Assembly: GCF_963853765.1 (NCBI RefSeq)
Contig: NC_088858.1
Span: 39,060,001 to 39,124,000, forward strand
DNA length: 64,000 nt
Origin: Magallana gigas
Taxonomy: Eukaryota
Direction: 5' to 3'
Positions 44,873-63,983 of the stretch are shown here, one piece after another (the first letter of the stretch is position 1; each line of letters starts with the position of its first letter). A program made the translations under genes and the position numbers. The notes beneath the pieces were generated by a model that searched no databases, was not told the DNA's origin, and worked only from the letters and a program-made list of their open reading frames with translations.

Positions 44873-47800
44873 CTATCGGTGTGGGCTATCTACTCTGCCA
44901 ATATCCTCCATAGGTCTTGTCTGAGGTTTATCTTTTTCATCGGTATCCTGGACATAGGCACCAGAAACATCATTCTGACCAGTGTCCATTAGACCGAGAT
45001 CTTGAAAATCCCCATCTAAGGCTTGAACCTTGAGGACCTCCCCCATTCCTTTGGTTGTTCCCTGTCGGAAGAGCAGTCTGGACCCTGGTCTCACGAACTC
45101 TGGCTGCTTCAGGAAACGGAACAAGACACGTGCCTTTTCATTTGTCTTTATGGACTCCTAAAATAAAGAAATAAAACATTTTTTACCTTCATACTTTCTC
45201 TCGATTCCAAACTACTCATAAATACATTTTTTTCCTTTCAGAATCTGCCATTTGCAGAAAAATCAGATTTGAAGAGTTGTCATAAAGAAAACACTAACAG
45301 ATATGTACATACCTTGTCTACAATGATATCCACCTTACAGATCTGGCAGACATTTCCCACATGCACTGTGGTTTCAAATCCTTTGCTGATTCGATGGCTG
45401 TGATAAAGCAGATAGATGTCAGCCTCGAAGATTCTGCAAACAAAGTTTGGGAAGGTAGACTTTGGGCTTACCAACACCATCCCCTGTAAAAGAAATTTAT
45501 GCATATATATAATATATAGCTTTAGTTTTCACTGTTGCATAAAAGTTTTCACCTTTACATAAATTTAATCTTTAAGCTCAGATTTTTCATTTAATGCAGA
45601 TAAGACAGAAAAGATGTCAGCATTTATTGCAAATGTATTATTGATTGTACAATATACAGAAAAGATGTCAGCATTTATTGCAAATGTATTATTGATTGTA
45701 CAATATAATGCCAATACAATATAATAAACACATACATGCAAAGTTTTTATTCTTAAAATAATGTATAACTACATAAAAGCAATTGAAAACAGAAAATCCA
45801 TACAGAGTAAATTAAGATTATACAATATACACTTGGACTAGTATATATGAGCCTTATCTTTTTAAGTACATACCCTCCTGAGAATGTCTCGGTGGTTTTC
45901 AGTCAGAGCGACGGTAGCTGCCTGGCCCGCCTGAATGAGGCGACACGGGACTCTGTTCCTGTGGACAGTTTTGACGGTCACTTCCCGGAAGTTGCCATCC
46001 TCCAATGGACCGAGGTGTAACTTGTCCCCCTCCTTTATGGACCCCCGACTGATGTGGCCTCCTAGAACACTGTCAACACCAGGAACAGTGAACTGTGTGT
46101 CAATCTACAATGCAAATTTTGTTTATTTTAAAAAAAATGGTCAATTAGAACAAAAAATGAAAAGGAAATAAGAAGCAGTTTTAAAGAAGACCGTTGAATT
46201 GATTAGTTTCTGACCTGGAATTCAGTATGGTCTTGGGATAATTTCTCTCTCTCTGTCACATTCTTCATGGAAGGAAGAACATTTAGGAACCGGGTTAATA
46301 GATCCATATTTTTTCCAGTGACACTTGATATCGTAAATATGGGGGTTATCCTGCAATATAACAGAAGCATTTAGTATGAAGTATCCTAAAAATAACCAGT
46401 AAAGATCAATAAGGGGAATTCATGAGTAAGGTTTACCTCTCAGAGTTGAAGTTAGCAGCTGCTGTCATTGCGTCATCCTCAGATTTGATTCGTAATGGCA
46501 CTCGGTTACAGCCGGGGGACTTCAGTATTTTCTCCAGCTGCGAGACGGTTCTTTCAATCATGAACCTCCTACACATATCAATCTTGGTGATGACTACAAA
46601 TACAGGGACGCCCAGCGCCAGGGCAAAACCAAGGTGCTCTCTTGTGGTGCCAGCTAAAAGTATAACCAAAATACTGTAAAATATCTGGAATATCCTGGTA
46701 TTCTATGTGGGTATGATATGCATCACTGGAAAAAATTGTGATGCATTCATTCTAATGTTCATGTCGAAATAGCTGGAGTTGGGCTGATTTTTTTTTTTTT
46801 TATTGGTCGTTTGGGATTTAACTACAATTTTTATTGACCAACTGAAAATATTTACATTCATACTGGACTGATACTATTATAAAGACCTTTGAGCCATCAT
46901 TTACAATACATGTATTTTAAGCCTGATATTATGCTTGATGTAGCAGGAAAAGTTTGTGTAATAGCAATCTCTTACCCATCCCTGTATTGGCAGACACCAC
47001 AAGCATGGCAAAGTCTGGACAGTACCCTGTCAACCCAAATATGGTGGTTTTCAAGTATTTATGGTGGCCTGCTAAATCTATCAGAGTTATAAGTTTGGTG
47101 GAATGTTCACATATCTCCTCCACTGTTTTAGAGTCACTGTAGTTGACTATCTGGAAAGTAACATATAATTTGAAAGTAAAGATTTTAGATAAATTAATAA
47201 GAGTATTTTTCAAATTGTAGATTTCCTATGAAGAATATTGATATGTACCGGTAGTTCACTTTTGTTCTTTTAAAAAACTAAACTGTTTTTAAATTGGTGA
47301 TAGTCACCCATATACTAAATGTCATGTGTTAAACACTGTTGAGAAGAATAACAACATTATAAAATTTTATCTAATATCTTCCCAGTCTTTAAATATAAAC
47401 GTTTCATTCTGACAGGAATAAGCAACATTTCTTTTTATTCTTGACTGTTAAATCCTTAAAGGAGTATAGCGCACTTATAATGGAATATCGCATACAATAT
47501 AGCACATTTTAAAAAATGAATTTTTATTGATTTTTTTCAAATGTTTCCATTATTTTACAGTTCGTACAAATCGTAAAGAAACTTGGTAAAAAATGTTAGA
47601 GTAGTGTCGATAAAAATCCGATAAAATAATCAGTTTTTGTATTGACCATAAGGGAATATGTGATGTGGGCATTGGCAAATAACAAAAACAAACATTAAAC
47701 CAATGTTAGGAAATGGAAAACACTCGCAATACCAACAAAAATTGGATATATTGACACCATCTGTTCAAGACGCAGCGGCAATTCCTGAGGTAGAGATTGA

Positions 47801-50800
47801 TCTCAAACTTCTCGACTAACTTACGTATGTGATAGTAAATGAATAATTATTACCACTTTAAAATTGTTTGCATGTGTTGTTATTGCATTTATTAAAAGGA
47901 TGTGTATCAGATTATTATTTAAGAGTGGAAAATGCAGATTCATATGACCACACTTTGAATTTAATCGCAATATGTTAAATACCACTGTTTAATTAAGTAT
48001 TACAAAAGCTTGACCTTAAATTTCAACGCGTCAGATAAATCTATTTATAGAAGCAGGTACTTTCCATTTAAAAATGAGAAAGGGCGAAGAAATGGGAAAG
48101 TACGCTATACCTCTTTCATGATTTATGCATGTACAGGGTTTCTTACCTCCCCTTGACTATCAAATCCTAGGATTTCATGACTTATACATGAAGTTCTTCC
48201 AGTCTGGATCTCATGTAGATGACGGAACAAATTCAGTCTGGCACGCCCCCTCCCATTATCCAGTCCCCCCTGGGTGAGGACTCCAAGCAATGTAGATTTA
48301 CCAGCATCCACATTTCCTAGTACGGCCAGTTTGAGATCTATAAACTGCAAAAATTGGAACAGTCAGTTGTCAAATTTCATTCTTATAAGTAACACTAATA
48401 ACCATTCACCTGCTTTTTTTCAAATTTAATATCTGTAACATTACCTGCTGAATGATTTTTTTTAATGATTAAAACTGTATTTCATTCATAACATATTGGA
48501 ATAAGAAAAGAAAGGTTGTGTATGTAATGGCCTACCTCCTGATTTTCAGGGACCTTTCTAATAAGGATTTCTAATGCTTTTCTTTGGCACTCTGCTCCCT
48601 CGGCTTCCACTAAACGCTCTCTAAGTATAGTTGTTGTAGCTCCAAGTCTACAAACAAGTGAGTAAAATTAATTAAATTGTTTAGTCAAGAATAACATTAA
48701 AATTGTTTTCAATAAAGAGAAATAAATGAATCATTTTGCATTTAATTAGTTAAAGCAGAAAAGGTATAATTTTTTTCTGGATTACCAAGAGAAAAAGTGA
48801 TTCCATTTTCATAAAAATAAACATGCATCATTTTCTATAAACTAACAAATGTGTTCAACTATTATAACCACAGATAACAATGAAAGACAACTGAGCCACA
48901 ACTGATAGCCAATCAGAATTGCTTCTCCCCTGACCTGCTGGCCATTGTGTTGAGTGTGTTGAGGGAGGCGGTTAGTTCCTGGTCCGTCAACCCCACCAAC
49001 AGGCCGTTGTCCTCCACCCCGATCTCGTAGATGGCCTCCCCTTCTCCCTCCTCCAGCCGCCATTTCATTTGAGTGACAAGGTGCTCCACTCGAGATTCCG
49101 ATGGGTTTACTAGCTTCAGCTAATAGAAAATAAGTAACACTCTCAAATACACGTACTTTGCACCTACAAAATGTATATTGGTACATTGTATTAATTAAAT
49201 ATGAAATATTCATTTATCTGAGCGTTTTTTTGTCATGTTGGTCACATATTTTTTATTATTCAGTCATATCAATAATCCGAGCTATTTTGTTTATGATTTA
49301 GCATATATGTGGTTTTCATTTACTGGTAGTTTAATGTTCAATTATTAAAGCATCTGAACAAACAAGAAAATCAATGGTTAGAAATATTTTTTGACTGACT
49401 ATGTCAATATACAGGTAAAGAGTAGATATGTCAAGGTAAACATAAATACAGACTGATTAAATGCTCATCCTGAAAAACAGTCTAATAAGTTAACAGATGC
49501 AGAATGTGGGTGGCATAGTATTGAATAGAGTTACTGCAAATACAAAGTACAGTATTTAGTGTATACATACCTTATACTCAATGTTTCCTTCTTCTATCTG
49601 AAAAAAGGAAATAAAAGATGAGTTTAACATTTTTGATAGAAATTCCTTTATGTATCATAAACAAAACAAACAAAGACATATATAAGTAGAGTTGTCAAGG
49701 AAGGACCAATGGATCAATACTTTCTCTCAAAAGCGGCCTCTACTGAAGAAATTCAATGTTGATAACTTGGAAATGATGTATAACCTTGACCTTTGTCAAA
49801 AACATTATTAATAATTGTTTCCTGATTAAGACAGATTGCATGGATACTAGCTATTATTCAGTATTCACTGTAGACTTACTCAGGGGAATAATGTTTAATA
49901 AACATCTTTTTTGGGGTATGTTATTCTGTCTCCAATTATACATACCATGTGACCATAACAGTCAAAGATAAATGAAGATTGATAAGGTTCAAGGTCATGC
50001 AACAATTATCATAATCTGTTCAATGTACGGTAGATATGGTCATTATGTCTGACTATATACTATCATCGAAATGATATATATGCTGCACAGTGCACAAAGT
50101 CCTAATTTGAATATATCCTCAACATTAATTTTTAATCCTGGAAATGAAACATCCCTACACAGTTCAGAGAAAAAAAACTTTTAAATATACCAGTACATGT
50201 ATGTGTAGAAACTTCACTTGTTTATTCAAACAATAAAATGCTTTCTTTGGTGGTTCATTTGGGATATGAAGGTAGCGACATTGCAGGAAAAATACATAAA
50301 TTTTTCCTGCAATGATCGCTACCTTCATAACCCGCATGAATCATCAAAGAAAGCATTTTATTGTTTATATTAACATCTTTCTTTAACTAATTAATAAACT
50401 GATTATGAAAAGTTAGTAAAATTCACTAAATTACTGTTAATGTACAAAAGTATGTTAGCTAAAAGAAACAGCTAAAACGTCATGATTATTCATTATTTCG
50501 TGCAGTCTGGGATTTTACTAAGGTCGCTGTAGGTTCAGACCAATCGTTAAACAGGGCGTGTCAATTTCAGTCCTGTCACTTTCAGCCGCTGTAGATTTCG
50601 ACCAATTGATAAATAGGGCATGTAGATTTCAGTCTGGGCTGTTTCTATAGAGCTATGAATTAACTATAAGTTTCCGTAAGAAATAGAGGAAATTATGCTT
50701 GTTAGATGTAAATATAATAATTTTAATGAAAATTATCCAATGTCTGAATGTTATTTATTTGATAAATTTACTTATGAAGGACCAAATATTATTAATCCGA

Positions 50801-53016: not shown

Positions 53017-53088
53017 GCCCTTTGTCACTCCTCCAACTATGCCAAGTACAGAGTACTTTTAGACAGAGTCATCATTATGGACAAAGCC
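53017..53088 (-). promoter_or_regulatory. Type II SECIS element in the SELENON 3' UTR
   Basis: CTTTGTC cata ATGA TGACTCTGTCT AAA AGTAC tct GTACT TGGCATAGTTG GA ggagt GACAAAG. This gives a 7-bp helix I, an ATGA/GA core (53075-53072), 11 nt to an unpaired AAA, and an apical mini-helix. Confidence 0.85.
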
Positions 53089-53966: not shown

Positions 53967-54057
53967 TTATCCAGAGGATGTCTGCAGATAATCCGCGGAG
54001 CGTTTAATTCCTTCCTTCAGAAACGCATGGTAATGATAGGTATGAGGGTCTTCAAAT
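53967..54057 (-). CDS. SELENON: SELENON alternative last exon B
   Basis: Acceptor tttttgttgttgtag, same phase; encodes (G)[29 protein letters not shown], closest to the recalled vertebrate FEDPSTATYMQFLKEGL. Confidence 0.8.
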
Positions 54058-57000
54058 CTACAACAACAAAAATCGCACAAGATTGATCAGTAAATTGTTC
54101 TATCTTTTACACATTTCTAAAAAAAGCATCGGGCATGAAAGGAGCTGATTTCTGAATGGCATGCTGCAGAAATTTCATGTAATGGTACTCTTGAGGGCCA
54201 TCGAACCTGTTAAGAAAAAAAATAAAAACTCAGAATTAGATGAAAAAAAAATGTTGAATTTTTGTTATAAGGATTCTTTTTTTTTTTTATCACCAAAGCC
54301 ATATACCGGTACTGGTAACTTTTTTTTTAAATGATAGAAAACCCAAAACCATAAGCCACCCATTGACGTGTGCTAAATATTTGTGCAATCTTTGGAAAAT
54401 AAGTTCAAAAAGTTGCAAGAAAACACTCTTAATTATTTGATACATATTTGATTGAAAGACACAATATCTATTTTCATCGAGAAATAAACACAACATTAAA
54501 CAAGATTAACAGAGACAGAAGTTGGTTAAGGGAAATCCAGTAAATAGCACCCAGTAATACATTTTTTAATATAAAGAAAAGTGTGAATCCAAGTTGGTTG
54601 ATCAAAAGAAAAGGCACAAAAAATTTAATCTTTCAAACTTAATTACAGCTTTGGGAGTGATAGAGTTTTGTGTCAGAACAGACAAGTTATATCAATTAAA
54701 ATGAAACTAATTTTAAAATCTGTAACCTGGTATATTTCTTTGGTTAGATAAAACTAAATAAGTTGCTTTGATTAAATAGAAACATGTTTGGTGTTCAAAC
54801 AGATAATTTCACAAACCACAACAGTGATGGTGGAAGTAAACAGAAAAGAATTGTGAGAGTAAAATGTAGGGAAATCCGAGCTACACGTAGTCACACAAGA
54901 AGTTAGATCACCACTACAAGGTCTATACATACCCATCCGCCTTAAATTTCTCCAGATCTTGTTTTAACCTGGGGCACATCATGTCCCCTTGTGGGCCTGC
55001 TAATCTACTAGAGGCAGTTATTCTCTTGGGCTTAGGATTGACTTTTTCCATGAACTCCCTGTAAAAATTGCATTCTTTTTTATGCTCCATTATCTAGACT
55101 CCCCCAAATAATTAATCATTGGTACTTCTGGGTACCACTTTGTATGCAATTTATCATTCACCATCCTCATCTTATATTCTCCATATAAGTATCTCGATCA
55201 ATAAAAATATAGTATTTGAATGTATTCCCTCAAATTAACATTTTAATTTTCACATAAACAGACTTAAAAATTTTCTTTCTTTTTTTTTGCCTTATCGTTT
55301 TAATTACGTGATCTTTTCCATTTCCCCACCCCTACCCTAAACATTAAAAGGACAGCTGAAATTAAGTTCATTCCACATTTATAATGACAAAGTTTAAGGG
55401 TTCATGCATTGCATTTGGAACAGCTGAAATCCCATTACTTATAAAGTAAACAAAGGAGAGATAAACCCATGCATATTCCAAGAAAGTGAACAAAGTCCCA
55501 AAATACATGCAGTCTAACTCAATGGTTAGGGAGGCAAACACACAAATAAACCATATTTTCATAAACACAGATAGAATTTCTTAAAATTTTCATGGTTACA
55601 GGTTTATAATTGTAAAGTTTCGTCGACCACACCAAAGTGACTGCAGAATTTCCTGTTGTTTGGGAAAAAAAGTTAGTTATTTTGTTTGAAATGAACAAAT
55701 ACTGCACAGAACTCACACTTCATTTTGTTTCCCATAACAAAAATAAGTTTTATCCTTTTTTTCTTTCTTTTTTTAAATATTTGAAAAAAATTCTTCAAAT
55801 TACATACCAATTTTTTTTATCTTTCTTGAATTTGTTTTAGCTCTTTTTTGATCTACTGATCATATATTAAGTAAATAGATATTTTTAAAATTCGAAAAAT
55901 AAAGGCTGATAATGATCAGCAACGGTGAAGAATCTGTACAGTATTTCACACAACTTTTAAAAACAAGGTATGAGTTAGTATGTCTTATCTAAATTGCTAT
56001 ATATCAGCTCCTTTCAACAACATAGTATGAATATTATTTAAAACAAACAATTTTAGTAAAAGTATAATATGAAAATTTCTGCCTTTCAGCTTGGAAAAAA
56101 GAAAGTAAAAGTTTATACATTTTCTCTACTCAAGCTGAATGGTGATGGCAGTAAGGTAGAAAATGTATTGAAGCACATGTATCATAGTTATACATTTGAC
56201 CTTCATGGACTTGCTTTTCAAATGCATGAAAACTATAATAAATGTATTACTGCAAACTACAATTCTGATGATAGAGAGATAGATTGATTCGAGTCACTTG
56301 TGGGTTAATGACAATTTGGTGAATGATGATTGAAACTTGCATAGATAAAATTTATTAAAATGGAAATGAAAAAGATTGCCAAGCTGGAATGATAACCAAA
56401 ATATCTTGAATTCAAATGAAAATATTTTTTTTTTAAAACAAAACCTGGTATTTTTACAACTCTTCATTTTTACTATATTTTAAATTTATTTCACCCGTTT
56501 ATAATGACTGCCTACTTGCTGTGGCTTAACTTCCCCCTTGCTTTGGTTTACCAGAAGGTGCCTGTCGATAACCATAGCTAACAAAAAAAGAATTTCCCTT
56601 ACTGTGGTTTACCAAAAGGTCCCCGCCATAAACCCTAGTTAATTATTCTAATGACTCCCCCCTTGCGATGACTTACCCAAAGGTACCCACTGTAAACCTG
56701 AACTAATACTTTAATGACCTTCCCCCTGCAGTGGCTTACCCAAAGGTCCCCGCCAGGGAGCTGAAGAGGGAGGGCTCATCGTCGCCATCTGCTCCTTCAT
56801 CCATGAACTCGTTGGCGTTGACCTTGTGGAGGATGGTGCCATTAGGTAGAGCCACCATCATCATCACCGGGAACTTATAGTTCTCCAGGAAGTGGCTAGC
56901 CACCTTGCTGTACTCGGGCTGATGAGAATCTTTTTCAAGTTCCTGAAAAGATGGTTTATATTTTTAGGAACAACAAAATAGTCACGCCACATTGGCAAGT

Positions 57001-60000
57001 ACAATCTGATGAAAGCTCATTCTTCAACTGTTACTACAAGAGATGTGTCTTTGTCCAACTTCTGCATAAGAGCAAAAGAAAACTGGAAATTTTTTGTTTG
57101 TTAGAATTTAAACTCTTGATGATAGAAAATCATTAAATAACATTCAAAGAGTACAGAATTTAAATCATATATAATCAATCACATTAATTTGCTAATTGAA
57201 GCTAAATTCTATAATTCTATGGACACAAAGTCACTTAATAACCTCTTCATAACATATACAGCTTCACTAAACAAAATGAAACTGTCATCAATTGAGCACT
57301 CACCTTCAAATCAGCCACGAGTGACCAGCTGCTGACAAAGCTCTCGTTGAGGAGAGCCAGTACGGGCGTACTCTCGAGGGCTGTTTCCCTCAGAGTACGC
57401 CCTGAACCTCAGCAACTCTGATCGTCCAGCGCACCCCAAAGTAAGATGTGGTGCACCAGGCGGTTCTCTTTCTTGGCGACTTCAAATGCGTCCGTGAAGT
57501 TGTAATACACTATCTGCAGTAGTAAGTAGGAAGAGTAAAAAATAGCACTTAACGTCCTAATTGGGGGATTTTTTAAATATTATTTTTCCCATGTTTATGC
57601 ATATCTTGTGTTTGCAATAAGCAATGAACATTTCTTGCATTTTATCATTTACTTTAAGTTTTATAAAGGTGCAATCAAATAGCATTCTACATGTTGTAGC
57701 TCTTTCTAACAAAGAACATTATTAAACTGGCATATACATGTTAAAAGATTATTAATAATATGAAAACCTACAAAACATAAATCAGACCACATAGTCAAAA
57801 ATAGTGGATTGATGTACATGTATCTTACCTTTTTAAATGGATAGAAGGCTATTTCTAGAGTCCTCTCCGCATCATACATGGATATCTCCTTCTTCCACTT
57901 CATGTTCTGGACATTCTTTGCCATGTTCTTATCCTCTGGAAGCTCTTTCTCTTGGAGGTCTTTGGGGACTTTTTTGGATGGACTGGTGATTTGGATCTCC
58001 ATCTGAGGGATAAACCCAATGTCGACCTCCATATTTTCATCAGTCTCTGGACCATTCAGCCATTCCATATCTAAAGCACACAACTCTCAAGTTAGAAAAA
58101 TACTGGCACATGAATATGTACTGGTCAAGAATGGATTTCAAACTTTTTAGATGTATTTGTAGGATAAATGATTATTAAATATTTAAAACAATAAAACGTC
58201 AATTTCATGCTGTCTACAAGCTGGTTGGAATTTTGAATATCTTTTCCTTAACTTTGACAAAATGTTAAGAGCACTTATTTTTCCACATGATATAAATGTA
58301 TAGTATTAGCTTCACTAGAACTCAATGTTCTAAATATTGAGTTTACTTGTGTGAAAATTTTCGAAATTGCTATAATAAACATACCAATATTGAGACGTTT
58401 GTCGGTGGGAACATACATATGGAAGTACTGAATATGGGAGCCACCTCGTGAGATTATCAGATTGCCCTTGAATTGAGCTGGTGTGAACCAAAATGGGTAA
58501 TATGGCGGATCATTCAGTTGAAATTCTGCATGAATCCTACAACAGTTTGAGAAAAACATATGTTAGCAATTATGGTTTTTTTCAATCAAGTAAAATGATC
58601 AAATATGAGAACACAAAATTTTTTTTCAAAGATAAATAAATTGTTAACCAGGAAAAAATATTTTATATTTGAGGTATTATTCCTGCTATCTGCTATCCCC
58701 TGACCCTACCCTCCCCTCAAAACTATTGATTTCCTTTTAAAATTATATATTAAAATTGTATACACAGTAAGGCAGTTACCTGAAGACTATGTCAACATAT
58801 TTGTCATTGAATGCTCTTATAGTGGCCTTGGCCCCTTGAGGAGCAAACCTGGTCCTGAGGAAGGGGCGAGGATGAAACATGGTCAACAATCGATGGATGA
58901 GGACCACTCTATCCTCCACCTTAGGAGGATTATAGCGGTTGCTGGATTTCATTTGCACGTCAAACATAGCAAAAATTCCCTCGTCCATCTTGTAGATGTC
59001 ATATACTTCGCCTACTTTCTCAAGGAGCTGTTTGTCTTCTGGGAAGAAGGCCTGTTTAAAATGTTTGGCCCCATAGTTGTTCCACTCTTGAGTGAGAGAC
59101 GTCCATTTTTTCAGACCAATCAAGGAGTCCATAGAGTCGGACAGGAACTAAGGAGCATGAAAAATACATATCGTTCATGTCACTTCAATCTCATTATTTA
59201 ATAGTGAAATTATTTTCAAACATGTTAAGCATAAATAACCCTCATACTAGTCACATATAAAATGTATATACCGTATTTTCATGAAATTATTTACAGTTCA
59301 TCAAAATGACAGTTTGAAATCATGAACTTTGACCTTTTGTAGTTGTAAAATGGGTCCGGCAAAATCATCTGTATTTTATATGAAAATAAATTTAAACTAT
59401 AGCATAGTTAACAAAACGGTGTGTTACGTTGGCACAATTCCTAAAAAAAAAACACAAATGCAAACCTTATCTTATTCTACCGGTATTTTTAAATATTACA
59501 CAAAATGATTCATATGGGTTTTTCCGTCTATTGCTAGGAGTTTGTGTTTAAAAAGCCCAAGAATTCATATTAGAAAAAATGCAAATAAACCTAAGAAACA
59601 ACTTGCAATGCGAAATTACATTTTGTTGATTTTGAAATATATTAGTAAAATCACAATGAAATCAATGCCCACCAGTACTTCAGTACTTTGATTAAAAAAA
59701 TACTGTTACATGTTATGTAAAATTCATACAGCAAGATGTTGCATCAAAAGGACTGAACAAACAAACCATAAAAGTGAAACATGAGCAGGGTGAAAGTAAA
59801 AAAGCTGAAATTGACACCAACAGATCCTGTTGGCCACAAATCTAAATATATACCAATAAAACGCAACAGCTGTTGCATGGAAACTCAAACAACGGATTGA
59901 CAAAAAAACAAATCATGTTTAAATCACAGCATAGTGTCATGACAAATGCTCTTTCCATTTAAACGGACTAACTGTATTATCAGTACTTTATATAAATAAT

Positions 60001-62404: not shown

Positions 62405-63983
62405 CATTCATTCTGTCCAACACATTCTCACAGTTGAAGATTATTTTGATTGTCATGATATTAAATCAAATTTCATTGAAGTTTATACAATCACGAGACA
62501 CTTGTCAGAAGGTGGAGAGGAAGCCGGTGTTTGAGGTGACCACGCCCGCGGGAACAGTATGGCCGGTTGTGGTGGTGGAGCAGGTATAACATCCTCTATT
62601 GCTGGCTTCAAAAAGATCAATCATAAGGAAACAACCATTTTTTTCATGAGCATATACACATTTCCTCATTGCTCACACAACAAACCTTCACACAATTTTA
62701 TATGTTTGTACATTTATTACATACATGTATGTAGTAGGAAAGGAGGATTGAGCATTTAAATACAATGAAAATATATGACTGGACTGGAGATCGAACCCAG
62801 GACACCTGCAACTCTAGTCAGGAGCTCTACCACTGAGCTACCAAAGCTGATATCCATGTTCCATATAGCCCCAACTACTACACTCACATGCGCGGATCTA
62901 GAGGGGGGTCGGGGGGGTCCCGACCCCCCCTGGAAAATGAAAATTTATTAAATTTACATAGTAAAATTATCGCGAAAATATGCCTCGGACCCCCCCTGGC
63001 AAACACAATTATCCTTCGGACCCCCCCTGGAAAAAATTTCTGGATCCGCGCATGACTCATATATTAAAGATACATTTCTGGTTCTCATATTCATGCTGAG
63101 GAATGCCAGCAGGAGACAAATTTCATAGTTTGGACATGAATTTCTTGTTCATGAATTTATTTTCCTCTTATTTCCCTGTATCATTAGAGGGGCCTGCTAT
63201 TTTGCTGTCTACCCTTGGTCCCTGATAACCTGACCACAAGTCGACCAGATCTCATACAGATGTAAGTGTTCACACAGGGTTTTAGTCAATTTGATAAAAC
63301 TTTGTGAGAGAAGATCTTTTGTATGCCATTATTTCTTTGCTTTAAATTGTGTCTTTTGTTCTGTGTGCAGCAATATTTTTTAAGAAATAGCTTCTTTAAA
63401 AACAGCATTCTTAGTGATGTTTCATTCATCTATGAATAGTTACCGGTAAGTTGTATTTTCTTCAGACCTGGTGTTTCTCTTGGATTTTCCCTGCTCTGTG
63501 GATTGACAGACTTTCTGAGGCAATCCCCACCTTCTGAGGTAGCTCATACCATATGCAAGATAATATTGAAGAAAACATAGTAACAATACTAGATAGGTGG
63601 GTTTTTTTTTTTAAAACCAATTGCATAGAAGTAATTGAATTAAAATTACTAGGTCGCACAAAGGAGTGGAGACTTGCATCTATACCTGAACACAGCAGCT
63701 CCATTCGGAAGAATATCTGATGTCAATTGTGATACTGTGATGGCTAAAATGTCTAACAAACCTAGCTACCTCCCCAGAGCTCAGAAAGTGAGAAACAAAT
63801 CAGTATGAAATGATGTTGTTATAACTAAACATTATTACGTATGCAAAAAATGAGGGGTTTTGGAAGTGGATTTTAATGCTAAAATTATTTTAATACTTAC
63901 AGCAACCTTCTTGGAAACCTGTTCTCCACAAAGGAAAGAATATTCTGTATCTAGCCCTTACAGAAAACATCAGAGCTATCCAG
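61410..63983 (+). CDS. AP5M1: AP-5 complex subunit mu-1 (MUDENG), 5' part; continues beyond the window
   Basis: Exons 61410-61492 (MSIRALWIV...IIFTR), 62201-62324 (YFPLIEKKVKSANGEAYISLP...ALLFELG), 62482-62583 (FIQSRDTCQK...WPVV), then RGLLFCCLPLV, PGVSLGFSLLCGLTDFL, AAPFG, QPSWKPVLHKGK. Colinear with recalled human AP5M1. Confidence 0.88.
61771..61993. mobile_element. MITE, same family as 11598-11815
   Basis: Termini CTGTTGAATCATT / AATGGTTCCACAG followed by TA; shared internal motif. Confidence 0.7.
62326..62400. repeat. (CT)n microsatellite starting at the AP5M1 exon-2 splice donor
   Basis: GAA AAG|GTCTCTCTCT... Confidence 0.95.
62776..62884 (-). mobile_element. tRNA-derived SINE head
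   Basis: Minus strand TAGCTCAGTGGTAGAGC (A box) ... GGGTTCGATCTCC (B box); the acceptor stem is not intact. Confidence 0.65.
62887..63054. mobile_element. MITE with G/C-run interior
   Basis: Perfect TIR CATGCGCGGATC / GATCCGCGCATG; ACTCA on both flanks (possible TSD). Confidence 0.8.

What the first reader, a model, noticed from the sequence alone, without database searches (positions are those of the whole stretch)
57364..57411. Near-perfect SRE recoding hairpin next to the Sec codon, apparently conserved between mollusc and mammal
Six nucleotides after the in-frame TGA is a 16-bp Watson-Crick stem with one bulge and a 6-nt loop (GGGCGTACTCTGAGGG-AAACAG-CCCTC-G-AGAGTACGCCC). The spacer and stem length match the SRE described for mammalian SEPN1. 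As I recall the human sequence (GGGCGGACTCTCCGGGAGACTGTCCTGGAAAGTTCGCCC), several positions differ while pairing is kept or improved, for example G-U to U-A. That is compensatory change inside a coding region and implies a readthrough stimulator predating the protostome/deuterostome split.
Basis: partly seen in the sequence, partly recalled or inferred. Interest (0 to 1): 0.7.

Follow-up and report, generated by a model that had tools for sequence, protein, structure and literature searches.

The report
Oyster selenoprotein N recoding hairpin (SRE)
Right after the selenocysteine codon of a bivalve's selenoprotein N gene sits the same RNA hairpin that helps human ribosomes read UGA as selenocysteine, and 40 animal sequences from corals to vertebrates show it has been kept by selection on the RNA itself.

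Summary
On the minus strand, UGA (57411-57409) is followed by a 6-nt spacer and a 39-nt hairpin (57402-57364): 16 bp, one bulged G, 6-nt loop. RNA-seq shows the exon (57513-57304) is spliced and expressed.

The gene is SELENON. The geometry matches the published human SEPN1 selenocysteine redefinition element (SRE): 16-bp stem, 1-nt bulge, 5-nt loop, 6-nt spacer.

I fetched orthologue DNA from bivalves, a gastropod, an octopus, a rotifer, a spider, an insect, amphioxus, a vertebrate, a tunicate-like sequence, corals and metagenomes. Of 40 distinct sequences, 37 keep a hairpin in the same register.

- Covariation is strong. One pair shows six standard pair types, and G-C flips to C-G together with Gly..Pro changing to Ala..Gly.
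- Resampling synonymous codons gives 225±9 paired cells against 393 observed.

It is a new member of a known kind, and its function is inferred from human experiments.

Side lead: Planctomycetota carry SelN-like selenoproteins. Their bacterial-SECIS hairpin is centred on the same codon as the SRE loop.

Other agents of this scan noted this gene's SECIS and terminal exons, not this hairpin.

The parts
57409..57411 (-). In-frame UGA (Sec) codon of SELENON, in the motif ...[19 protein letters not shown]
   Evidence: Sequence and translation. Homologous ORFs in 28 representative proteins end at ...DDQSC.
57403..57408 (-). 6-nt spacer GGUUCA (Gly-Ser codons) between the UGA and the stem
   Evidence: GGU is used in 31 of 40 orthologues and +4 is always G. 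The literature says the spacer sequence matters (PMC8704476).
57364..57402 (-). SRE hairpin, 39 nt. 5' arm 57402-57387, loop AAACAG 57386-57381, 3' arm 57380-57364 with bulged G at 57375. It encodes [13 protein letters not shown].
   Evidence: Folds, covariation, codon-preserving null.
57304..57513 (-). Sec-containing exon (210 nt, phase 0), expressed and spliced
   Evidence: RNA-seq joints 56942|57304 and 57513|57829 with GT..AG ends on the minus strand. Depth about 30-90x in two poly(A)/cDNA runs.
57829..58070 (-). Upstream SELENON exon (DMEWLNGP...YPFKK)
   Evidence: Joints 57513|57829 and 58070|58385; tblastn.
56740..56942 (-). Downstream SELENON exon (…[26 protein letters not shown]…)
   Evidence: Joint 56942|57304 and loose ends at 56739/56740; tblastn.
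53022..53084 (-). Candidate 3'UTR SECIS element (AUGA ... AAAA ... UGA), needed for Sec insertion at the UGA
Evidence: Rfam SECIS_1 at 28.6 bits, E 0.024, below the gathering score of 35; sequence.

Best explanation
This is the bivalve orthologue of the SELENON (SEPN1) selenocysteine redefinition element (SRE). When the ribosome has the UGA in its A site, the base of a stable 16-bp hairpin lies 6 nt downstream, at the mRNA entry channel.

By analogy with the human element, the hairpin and its spacer disfavour termination and raise the share of ribosomes that decode UGA, with Sec-tRNA delivered through the 3'UTR SECIS. The RNA structure constrains the coding sequence. It fixes synonymous codons, and it even couples amino-acid replacements on the two arms.

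Shown here: the structure, its position, its expression, its orthology, and selection for pairing across Metazoa. Inferred: the recoding activity itself, which rests on human experiments.
For: Structure and significance.

Gene identity.

Same geometry as the human SRE: PMC3159437, PMC3628699.

Experimental role of the human element:
- It stimulates UGA and UAG readthrough (PMC2248747).
- It acts even without a SECIS (PMC4561486; PMC3159437).
- SRE mutations cause myopathy (PMC3541580).

Conservation: 37 of 40 distinct orthologue sequences fold a hairpin spanning nt 1-39 with 13-17 bp, starting exactly 6 nt after the UGA.

Covariation:
- Pair 6-34 occurs as AU, GU, GC, CG, UG and UA.
- Pairs 2-38 and 3-37 flip to C-G in L013/L031/L032, together with Gly→Ala and Pro→Gly.
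- Pair 3-37 is C-G in Rotaria and L022 (Pro→Ala).
- Pair 9-31 is A-U in L024/L073 (Ser→Cys).

Codon usage inside the hairpin is frozen: Ser13 is AGT in 33 of 35, Ser14 is TCG in 22 of 24, Pro15 is CCC in 24 of 26. The next codon outside it, Val16, uses all four codons.

The exon is transcribed and spliced, and a candidate SECIS lies downstream.
Against: - No functional assay exists in any mollusc.
- The window's upper stem uses a different register from vertebrates (3' bulge rather than 5' bulge), and loop sequences are not conserved. The human work reported that loop sequence matters.
- The element is dispensable in some lineages. It is lost in the Macrobrachium cluster (L011) and in L029, and shifted in Biomphalaria.
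- Pair counts cannot tell sense from antisense: 21 G-U cells against 16 A-C cells.
- Many metagenome rows have no taxon label and the rows are phylogenetically related, so the shuffle statistics overstate independence.
- The SECIS candidate scores below Rfam's threshold.
Confidence: 0.88

Rival explanations
1. The hairpin is conserved for another RNA-level job rather than UGA recoding. Examples would be pausing the ribosome for folding or ER handling, shielding the UGA-containing mRNA from nonsense-mediated decay, acting as an ADAR substrate, or influencing splicing of the adjacent ancient intron.
For: Selection is shown for pairing only, not for any activity. In many species an intron lies 1 nt after the UGA or inside the loop. 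The human literature links failed Sec decoding to mRNA loss (PMC12839072).
Against: The fixed 6-nt distance from the UGA is kept in 37 of 40 sequences whether or not an intron intervenes, so the element is defined on the mature mRNA relative to the UGA. Human mutagenesis directly shows an effect on termination and Sec insertion (PMC8704476). No A>G (on the plus strand, T>C) differences appear inside the hairpin among the listed RNA-seq differences.
Confidence: 0.07
2. The hairpin is a relic of a bacterial-type SECIS, kept by inertia or by the protein sequence, and has no present function in the oyster.
For: Planctomycetota SelN-like genes carry a bacterial-SECIS hairpin centred on the homologous codon.
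Against: Inertia cannot explain the repeated compensatory double changes. It also cannot explain synonymous codons frozen only inside the hairpin across lineages that are under 50% identical in protein.
Confidence: 0.03
3. It is a chance palindrome, or a by-product of the conserved peptide GRTLRE..LESSP.
For: The peptide is highly conserved.
Against: Codon-preserving resampling gives 5.9 of 11 pairs against 11 observed (0 of 2000 resamples). Over all sequences it gives 225±9 against 393. Dinucleotide shuffles give z = -4.78. Where the hairpin decays, the peptide also diverges (L011, L029, L006), which suggests the RNA constrains the peptide rather than the reverse.
Confidence: 0.01

Closest known systems
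Human SEPN1/SELENON selenocysteine redefinition element (SRE; Howard et al. 2005, 2007; Maiti et al. 2009)
   Same: Same gene, same codons (GRTLRE..LES.P) and a 6-nt spacer after the UGA. It has a 16-bp stem with one bulge and a small loop, and the lower stem GGGCG.ACUCU/AGAGU.CGCCC is almost identical.
   Different: The window has a 6-nt loop and a 3' bulged G, against a 5-nt loop and a 1-nt symmetric bulge in human (PMC3159437). Pair 6-34 is U-A instead of G-U. In the oyster the UGA and the hairpin share one exon, whereas amphioxus, scallop and coral-like contigs have an intron between them. No activity data exist for the oyster.
SRE/HRE hairpins of selenophosphate synthetase genes (Mariotti et al. 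2015, PMC4561486)
   Same: A coding-region stem-loop next to the UGA, conserved across metazoans, that promotes readthrough. It has been proposed to descend from a bacterial SECIS.
   Different: It is in a different gene and has a different sequence. The HRE overlaps the UGA and can be a three-stem structure.
Bacterial SECIS (E. coli fdhF)
   Same: A hairpin immediately 3' of the UGA, inside the ORF. In Planctomycetota SelN-like genes the apex GCAGGUCUGC is identical to the fdhF apex and is centred on the codon homologous to the SRE loop.
   Different: The window's loop (AAACAG) has no GGUC/SelB-type apex. The organism is an animal that uses a 3'UTR SECIS. The SRE is an enhancer, not the essential element (PMC5727441).
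3' stem-loops that stimulate stop-codon readthrough in alphaviruses and coltiviruses (Firth et al. 2011, PMC3159437)
   Same: A stable stem-loop a few nucleotides 3' of a UGA raises readthrough.
   Different: These are viral, decoded by near-cognate tRNAs rather than Sec-tRNA, and often larger.

Membership tests
SELENON (SEPN1) SRE | Lies in a SELENON orthologue, directly 3' of the Sec UGA of the SCUG redox motif | tested here: met
   The translation reads [19 protein letters not shown]. Exon-by-exon tblastn matches named SELENON proteins. The tree places the window next to a bivalve SELENON.
SELENON (SEPN1) SRE | 6-nt spacer between the UGA and the first stem pair | tested here: met
   GGUUCA, then G1-C39. 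The literature gives 6 nt (PMC3628699; PMC3159437).
SELENON (SEPN1) SRE | Stem of about 16 bp with a single 1-nt irregularity and a 5-6 nt loop | tested here: met
   16 bp, bulged G, 6-nt loop, -30.0 kcal/mol. Human: 16 bp, 1-nt symmetric bulge, 5-nt loop.
SELENON (SEPN1) SRE | Phylogenetic conservation of pairing, with compensatory change | tested here: met
   Cells paired: 91.4%. Pairs with double changes: 7 of 11. Shuffles reaching the observed score: 0 of 500. Codon-preserving null: 225±9 against 393 observed.
SELENON (SEPN1) SRE | Stimulates UGA readthrough and Sec insertion | not testable with these tools
   Only human data exist.
SELENON (SEPN1) SRE | The mRNA also carries a 3'UTR SECIS | tested here: inconclusive
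   Rfam SECIS_1 hit at 53022-53084(-) scores 28.6 bits against a gathering score of 35, E 0.024. The AUGA/AA/GA features are present.
Bacterial SECIS | Apical loop with the SelB-binding G-U (GGUC-type apex) at a set distance from the UGA, in an organism that has SelB | tested here: not met
   The window's loop is AAACAG and the host is an animal. By contrast, the Planctomycetota homologues have GCAGGUCUGC, as in fdhF, and encode SelB.

The most novel reading that the evidence does not exclude
The SELENON SRE may be the eukaryotic positional homologue, that is the descendant or the seed, of a bacterial-type SECIS.

Planctomycetota (Gemmataceae, Frigoriglobus, Planctomycetaceae and others) encode uninterrupted SelN-like selenoproteins, 31% identical to coral SELENON at E 1e-37. 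They have the same ...[10 protein letters not shown]-.SG..LR.G.L.S motif.

Their in-ORF hairpin GAGAGCA-GGUC-UGCUCUC has the apex of E. coli fdhF's SECIS. It is centred at nt 29.5 after the UGA, on the Gly codon homologous to the centre (nt 29) of the animal SRE. These genomes encode SelB.

This would be gene-specific support for the idea, raised for SPS genes by Mariotti et al. 2015, that SREs are downgraded bacterial SECIS elements. The alternative is convergence, because both elements must sit close to the UGA, or transfer of the gene from eukaryotes into bacteria.
Probability: 0.25. Interest if true: 0.75.

Novelty: new member of a known kind. Interest (0 to 1): 0.45.

Why it matters
The SRE is one of the few cis-elements besides the SECIS known to tune selenocysteine decoding, and mutations in the human element cause myopathy.

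Showing that the same hairpin, in the same register, is under RNA-level selection from corals to vertebrates has three consequences:
- It explains why the peptide GRTLRE..LESSP is so conserved.
- It gives a natural mutagenesis series: which pairs may vary, that the upper-stem register and the loop are free, and that a few lineages have lost the element.
- It identifies mollusc, cnidarian and arthropod systems for testing.

The Planctomycetota homologues offer a concrete test of whether SREs derive from bacterial SECIS elements.

Tried and rejected
- The primary SRE papers are not held (Howard 2005 PMC1142574, Howard 2007 PMC1869034, Maiti 2009 PMC2909032). I could not establish which species the original phylogenetic analysis covered. 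Reviews and citing papers mention only 'phylogenetically conserved', and EvoFold used eight vertebrate genomes.
- Literature searches for SRE together with invertebrate, mollusc or cnidarian terms found nothing on SELENON SRE outside vertebrates.
- Rfam at gathering thresholds finds no SECIS in the window. It has no model that hits the Planctomycetota hairpins.
- Pfam and NCBIfam have no family for the SelN core or for the bacterial homologues.
- The G-U against A-C count does not discriminate the strand.
- No polymorphism inside the hairpin appears among the listed RNA-seq differences, while 57403, 57406 and 57361 just outside it vary. The numbers are too small to mean much, and 17 differences were not shown.

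Full report
**1. What is in the window**

The feature lies on the minus strand. Reading 5'→3' the sequence is ...GAT CAG AGT TGC TGA GGT TCA GGG CGT ACT CTG AGG GAA ACA GCC CTC GAG AGT ACG CCC GTA.... The coordinates are:
- UGA: 57411-57409
- Spacer GGUUCA: 57408-57403
- Hairpin: 57402-57364

The hairpin is GGGCGUACUCUGAGGG / AAACAG / CCCUC-G-AGAGUACGCCC. That is 16 pairs, one bulged G at 57375 and a 6-nt loop.

The 76-nt context folds at -38.2 kcal/mol, against -23.3±3.1 for dinucleotide shuffles (z = -4.78, 0 of 200 as stable). The 39 nt alone fold at -30.0 kcal/mol.

**2. The gene**

The exon translates to [71 protein letters not shown] phmmer search of 1.84 billion representatives with the neighbouring 118-aa exon returned 150 hits. 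Twenty-eight of these are ORFs that stop at ...DDQSC, that is, at the UGA.

Cluster look-ups name these hits SELENON/selenoprotein N. The named species are Potamilus, Acanthosepion, Octopus, Branchiostoma, Biomphalaria, Stylophora, Stegodyphus, Nucella, Ciona, Pycnogonum, Mizuhopecten, Gryllus, Macrobrachium, Rotaria, Sanderia, Eptatretus, Vombatus and Oscarella.

tblastn lays these proteins on the window exon by exon. In a maximum-likelihood tree the window's protein sits next to the bivalve Potamilus, at 57% identity, in a weakly supported group that also holds Biomphalaria, the cephalopods, amphioxus and unlabelled rows (93/90 for the group; 93/74, drawn open, for the inner node).

A candidate SECIS lies 3' on the same strand at 53022-53084. 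Rfam SECIS_1 scores it 28.6 bits, below the gathering score of 35.

RNA-seq of the same species label confirms expression and the exon borders:
- Junctions are 56942|57304, 57513|57829 and 58070|58385, all GT..AG on the minus strand.
- Depth is about 30-90x over the Sec exon in X19 (both read orientations summed, per 64-nt bin), and about 24-43x in X21.

**3. Comparison with the known element**

[quoted passage not shown] It stimulates readthrough in cells even without a SECIS (PMC3159437). Other papers add the following:
- It is a stem-loop 6 nt downstream of the UGA (PMC3628699).
- It acts on UGA, UAG and UAA (PMC2248747).
- Mutations in it cause SEPN1-related myopathy (PMC3541580).

The window's element matches on gene, codons, spacer, stem length and single irregularity.

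**4. Orthologue DNA**

Twelve exact-protein look-ups gave DNA for the following:
- a Stylophora-cluster coral (L001)
- Branchiostoma (L003)
- a vertebrate transcript (L004, inside the hagfish+mammal clade)
- Octopus (L005)
- Biomphalaria (L006)
- Potamilus (L007)
- Mizuhopecten (L008)
- Stegodyphus (L009)
- Gryllus (L010)
- a Macrobrachium-cluster prawn (L011)
- Rotaria (L012)
- a tunicate-like metatranscriptome contig (L091)

One metagenome scan with the pattern WG[AVS]LDDQS added 70 loci. After splicing where needed and removing duplicates, there are 40 distinct animal-type sequences. All align without gaps from the UGA onward.

**5. Conservation and covariation**

Thirty-seven of the 40 sequences fold a hairpin that closes at nt 1-39, has 13-17 bp and starts exactly 6 nt after the UGA.

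On the 38-row alignment A2, the 11-pair lower stem gives these numbers:

| Measure | Observed | Control |
|---|---|---|
| Cells forming a standard pair | 91.4% | 80.3±0.9% after shuffling (0 of 500 reach it) |
| Cells with changes on both sides | 36 | 7.5±2.7 |
| Covariation score | 0.314 | 0.106 |
| Cells paired with the 3' partner slid by 1-3 columns | — | 31-54% |

Individual pairs show the following:
- Pair 6-34 occurs as AU (14 rows), GU (8), GC (7), CG (5), UG (2) and UA (1, the window).
- Pair 3-37 occurs as GC (24), AU (4), CG (4) and GU (2).
- Pair 4-36 switches to A-U through the CGN→AGG change.
- Pair 9-31 switches to A-U through ACA with UGU.

Several of these changes alter the protein on one or both arms in a coupled way:
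- Gly..Pro → Ala..Gly (GCC…GGC) in L013/L031/L032
- Pro → Ala (GGC…GCC) in Rotaria and L022
- Pro → Ser (GGA…UCC) in Mizuhopecten, Gryllus, L027 and L063
- Ser → Cys in L024 and L073
- Thr..Ser → Ser..Asp in Biomphalaria

**6. Is it more than amino-acid constraint?**

Yes. I kept each peptide fixed and resampled synonymous codons, matching GC3. The summed lower-stem pairing is 393 of 429 cells observed, against 225±8.6 under the null (maximum 253). The summed MFE is -970 kcal/mol, against -372±19.

Codon use tells the same story:

| Codon position | Location | Usage |
|---|---|---|
| Ser13 | Inside the hairpin | AGT in 33 of 35 |
| Ser14 | Inside the hairpin | TCG in 22 of 24 |
| Pro15 | Inside the hairpin | CCC in 24 of 26 |
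| Thr5 | Inside the hairpin | ACT in 29 of 36 |
| Val16 | First codon outside | GTT 11, GTA 7, GTC 6, GTG 5 |
| Gly (spacer) | Spacer | GGT in 31 of 40 |

The skew in the spacer Gly codon fits the reported role of the spacer.

**7. What varies**

- The upper stem changes register. Vertebrate, rotifer and many other sequences have a 5' bulge at nt 12. The oyster, L019 and L022 have a 3' bulge. Corals, amphioxus and octopus have a symmetric mismatch.
- Loop length and sequence vary.
- The hairpin is lost in the Macrobrachium cluster (4 of 11 pairs) and in L029 (3 of 11). In Biomphalaria it is reduced to a central 11-bp stem. In these three the peptide has also diverged (GRALREGPLSSSK, ARNMRDGHLKDDQ, ARSLRNTALKDPH).
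- Intron positions differ. Amphioxus, scallop and many coral-like genomic contigs have an intron one nucleotide after the UGA (TGAG|GT...). Rotaria has one inside the loop. The oyster, Potamilus, Octopus and the arthropods have none.

The element is thus defined on the spliced mRNA.

**8. Mechanism**

Most likely, at about 0.88, this is the orthologous SRE. It would be a stable helix at the mRNA entrance when the UGA is in the A site. Together with the +4..+9 context, it would slow termination and favour decoding by Sec-tRNA recruited through the 3'UTR SECIS. Structure, position, expression and selection are shown here. The activity is inferred from human experiments.

The rivals are unlikely:
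- Another RNA-level role: about 0.07.
- A functionless relic: about 0.03.
- Chance or peptide-driven pairing: about 0.01.

**9. Novelty**

The SRE of SELENON has been known since 2005, and its conservation in vertebrates has been published (EvoFold, PMC1440920). I could not read the primary paper, so I cannot say whether invertebrates were included there. No held paper mentions a SELENON SRE outside vertebrates.

I file it as a new member of a known kind. It comes with a useful extension: the hairpin predates the cnidarian-bilaterian split, and it shapes the protein sequence.

**10. Side lead**

Sixteen metagenome loci and seven GTDB genomes of Planctomycetota encode uninterrupted SelN-like ORFs with an in-frame UGA in the same motif...[22 protein letters not shown].... 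The genomes are labelled Gemmataceae, Frigoriglobus, Planctomycetaceae and other Planctomycetota, and one locus sits on a 3.8-Mb contig.

The evidence on this lead:
- One of these proteins is 31% identical to coral SELENON over 279 aa (E 1e-37).
- Seventeen nucleotides after the UGA they carry GAG(A/G)GCA-GGUC-UGCUCUC. Its apex GCAGGUCUGC is identical to the apex of the E. coli fdhF SECIS, read here from NC_000913.3.
- A compensatory A-U→C-G change (AGA→CGA together with UCC→GCG) occurs in L064/L066/L069.
- All four genomes tested encode SelB above the curated cut-off.
- The proteins align without gaps around the Sec. The bacterial hairpin is centred at nt 29.5 after the UGA, and the animal SRE at nt 29, on the same Gly codon.

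This fits the hypothesis, raised for SPS genes (PMC4561486) and echoed in a recent review (PMC12936836), that SREs derive from bacterial SECIS elements. Convergence is an equally open reading, because both elements must sit next to the UGA. So is transfer from eukaryotes into bacteria. I give the descent reading about 0.25.

Noticed in passing
L083-L089 (GTDB Planctomycetota genomes); L057, L060, L064-L067, L069, L071, L072, L074-L077, L081, L082 (metagenomes): These are bacterial SelN-like selenoproteins: uninterrupted ORFs with UGA in [22 protein letters not shown]. They are followed by a bacterial-SECIS-type hairpin whose apex GCAGGUCUGC equals that of E. coli fdhF. SelB is present in 4 of 4 genomes. 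No Pfam or NCBIfam family covers them.
   Followed up: partly
L003:5822-6290, L008:6559-6860, L012:2860-2960, and L037, L039, L041, L043-L049, L052, L054, L059, L061-L063, L068: An intron lies one nucleotide after the Sec UGA (TGAG|GT...) in amphioxus, scallop and many coral-like or other genomic contigs. Rotaria has an intron inside the SRE loop. The window, Potamilus, Octopus, spider and cricket have the UGA and the hairpin in one exon. This is probably an old intron position that has been lost several times.
   Followed up: partly
L011:1137-1196, L029:883-942, L006:14443-14502: The SRE is lost in the Macrobrachium-cluster prawn and in metagenome sequence L029, and reduced to a central stem in Biomphalaria. 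In the same sequences the otherwise invariant peptide GRTLRE..LESSP has diverged. This suggests the RNA structure is a main reason for that peptide's conservation.
   Followed up: partly
window 56739-56740, 55028-55057 and 54028-54057 (minus strand): RNA-seq reads leaving the exon that ends at 56740 continue into two different downstream exons. One starts at 55057 (78 and 21 reads) and gives ...[15 protein letters not shown]-stop. The other starts at 54057 (15 and 15 reads) and gives the canonical ...[20 protein letters not shown]... end. So alternative 3' exons are used.
   Followed up: partly
window 57361, 57403, 57406: Synonymous polymorphisms in the RNA-seq runs lie just outside the hairpin: the last spacer base, the GGU third base, and the first codon after the stem. 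None of the listed differences falls inside the 39 nt. The numbers are too small to be significant.
   Followed up: no
window 50220-50374: A long perfect-looking inverted repeat gives weak sub-threshold hits on both strands to several miRNA precursor models (best 33.9 bits against a gathering score of 90). It may be a transposon-derived hairpin.
   Followed up: no
window 62776-62847 (minus strand) and 44873-49089 (minus strand): There is a tRNA-like hit (Rfam tRNA, 31 bits, gathering score 29). Downstream of SELENON, exons read like a GTPBP1/2-type GTPase (…[18 protein letters not shown]…). The GTPase call rests on my reading of the ORF list only.
   Followed up: no
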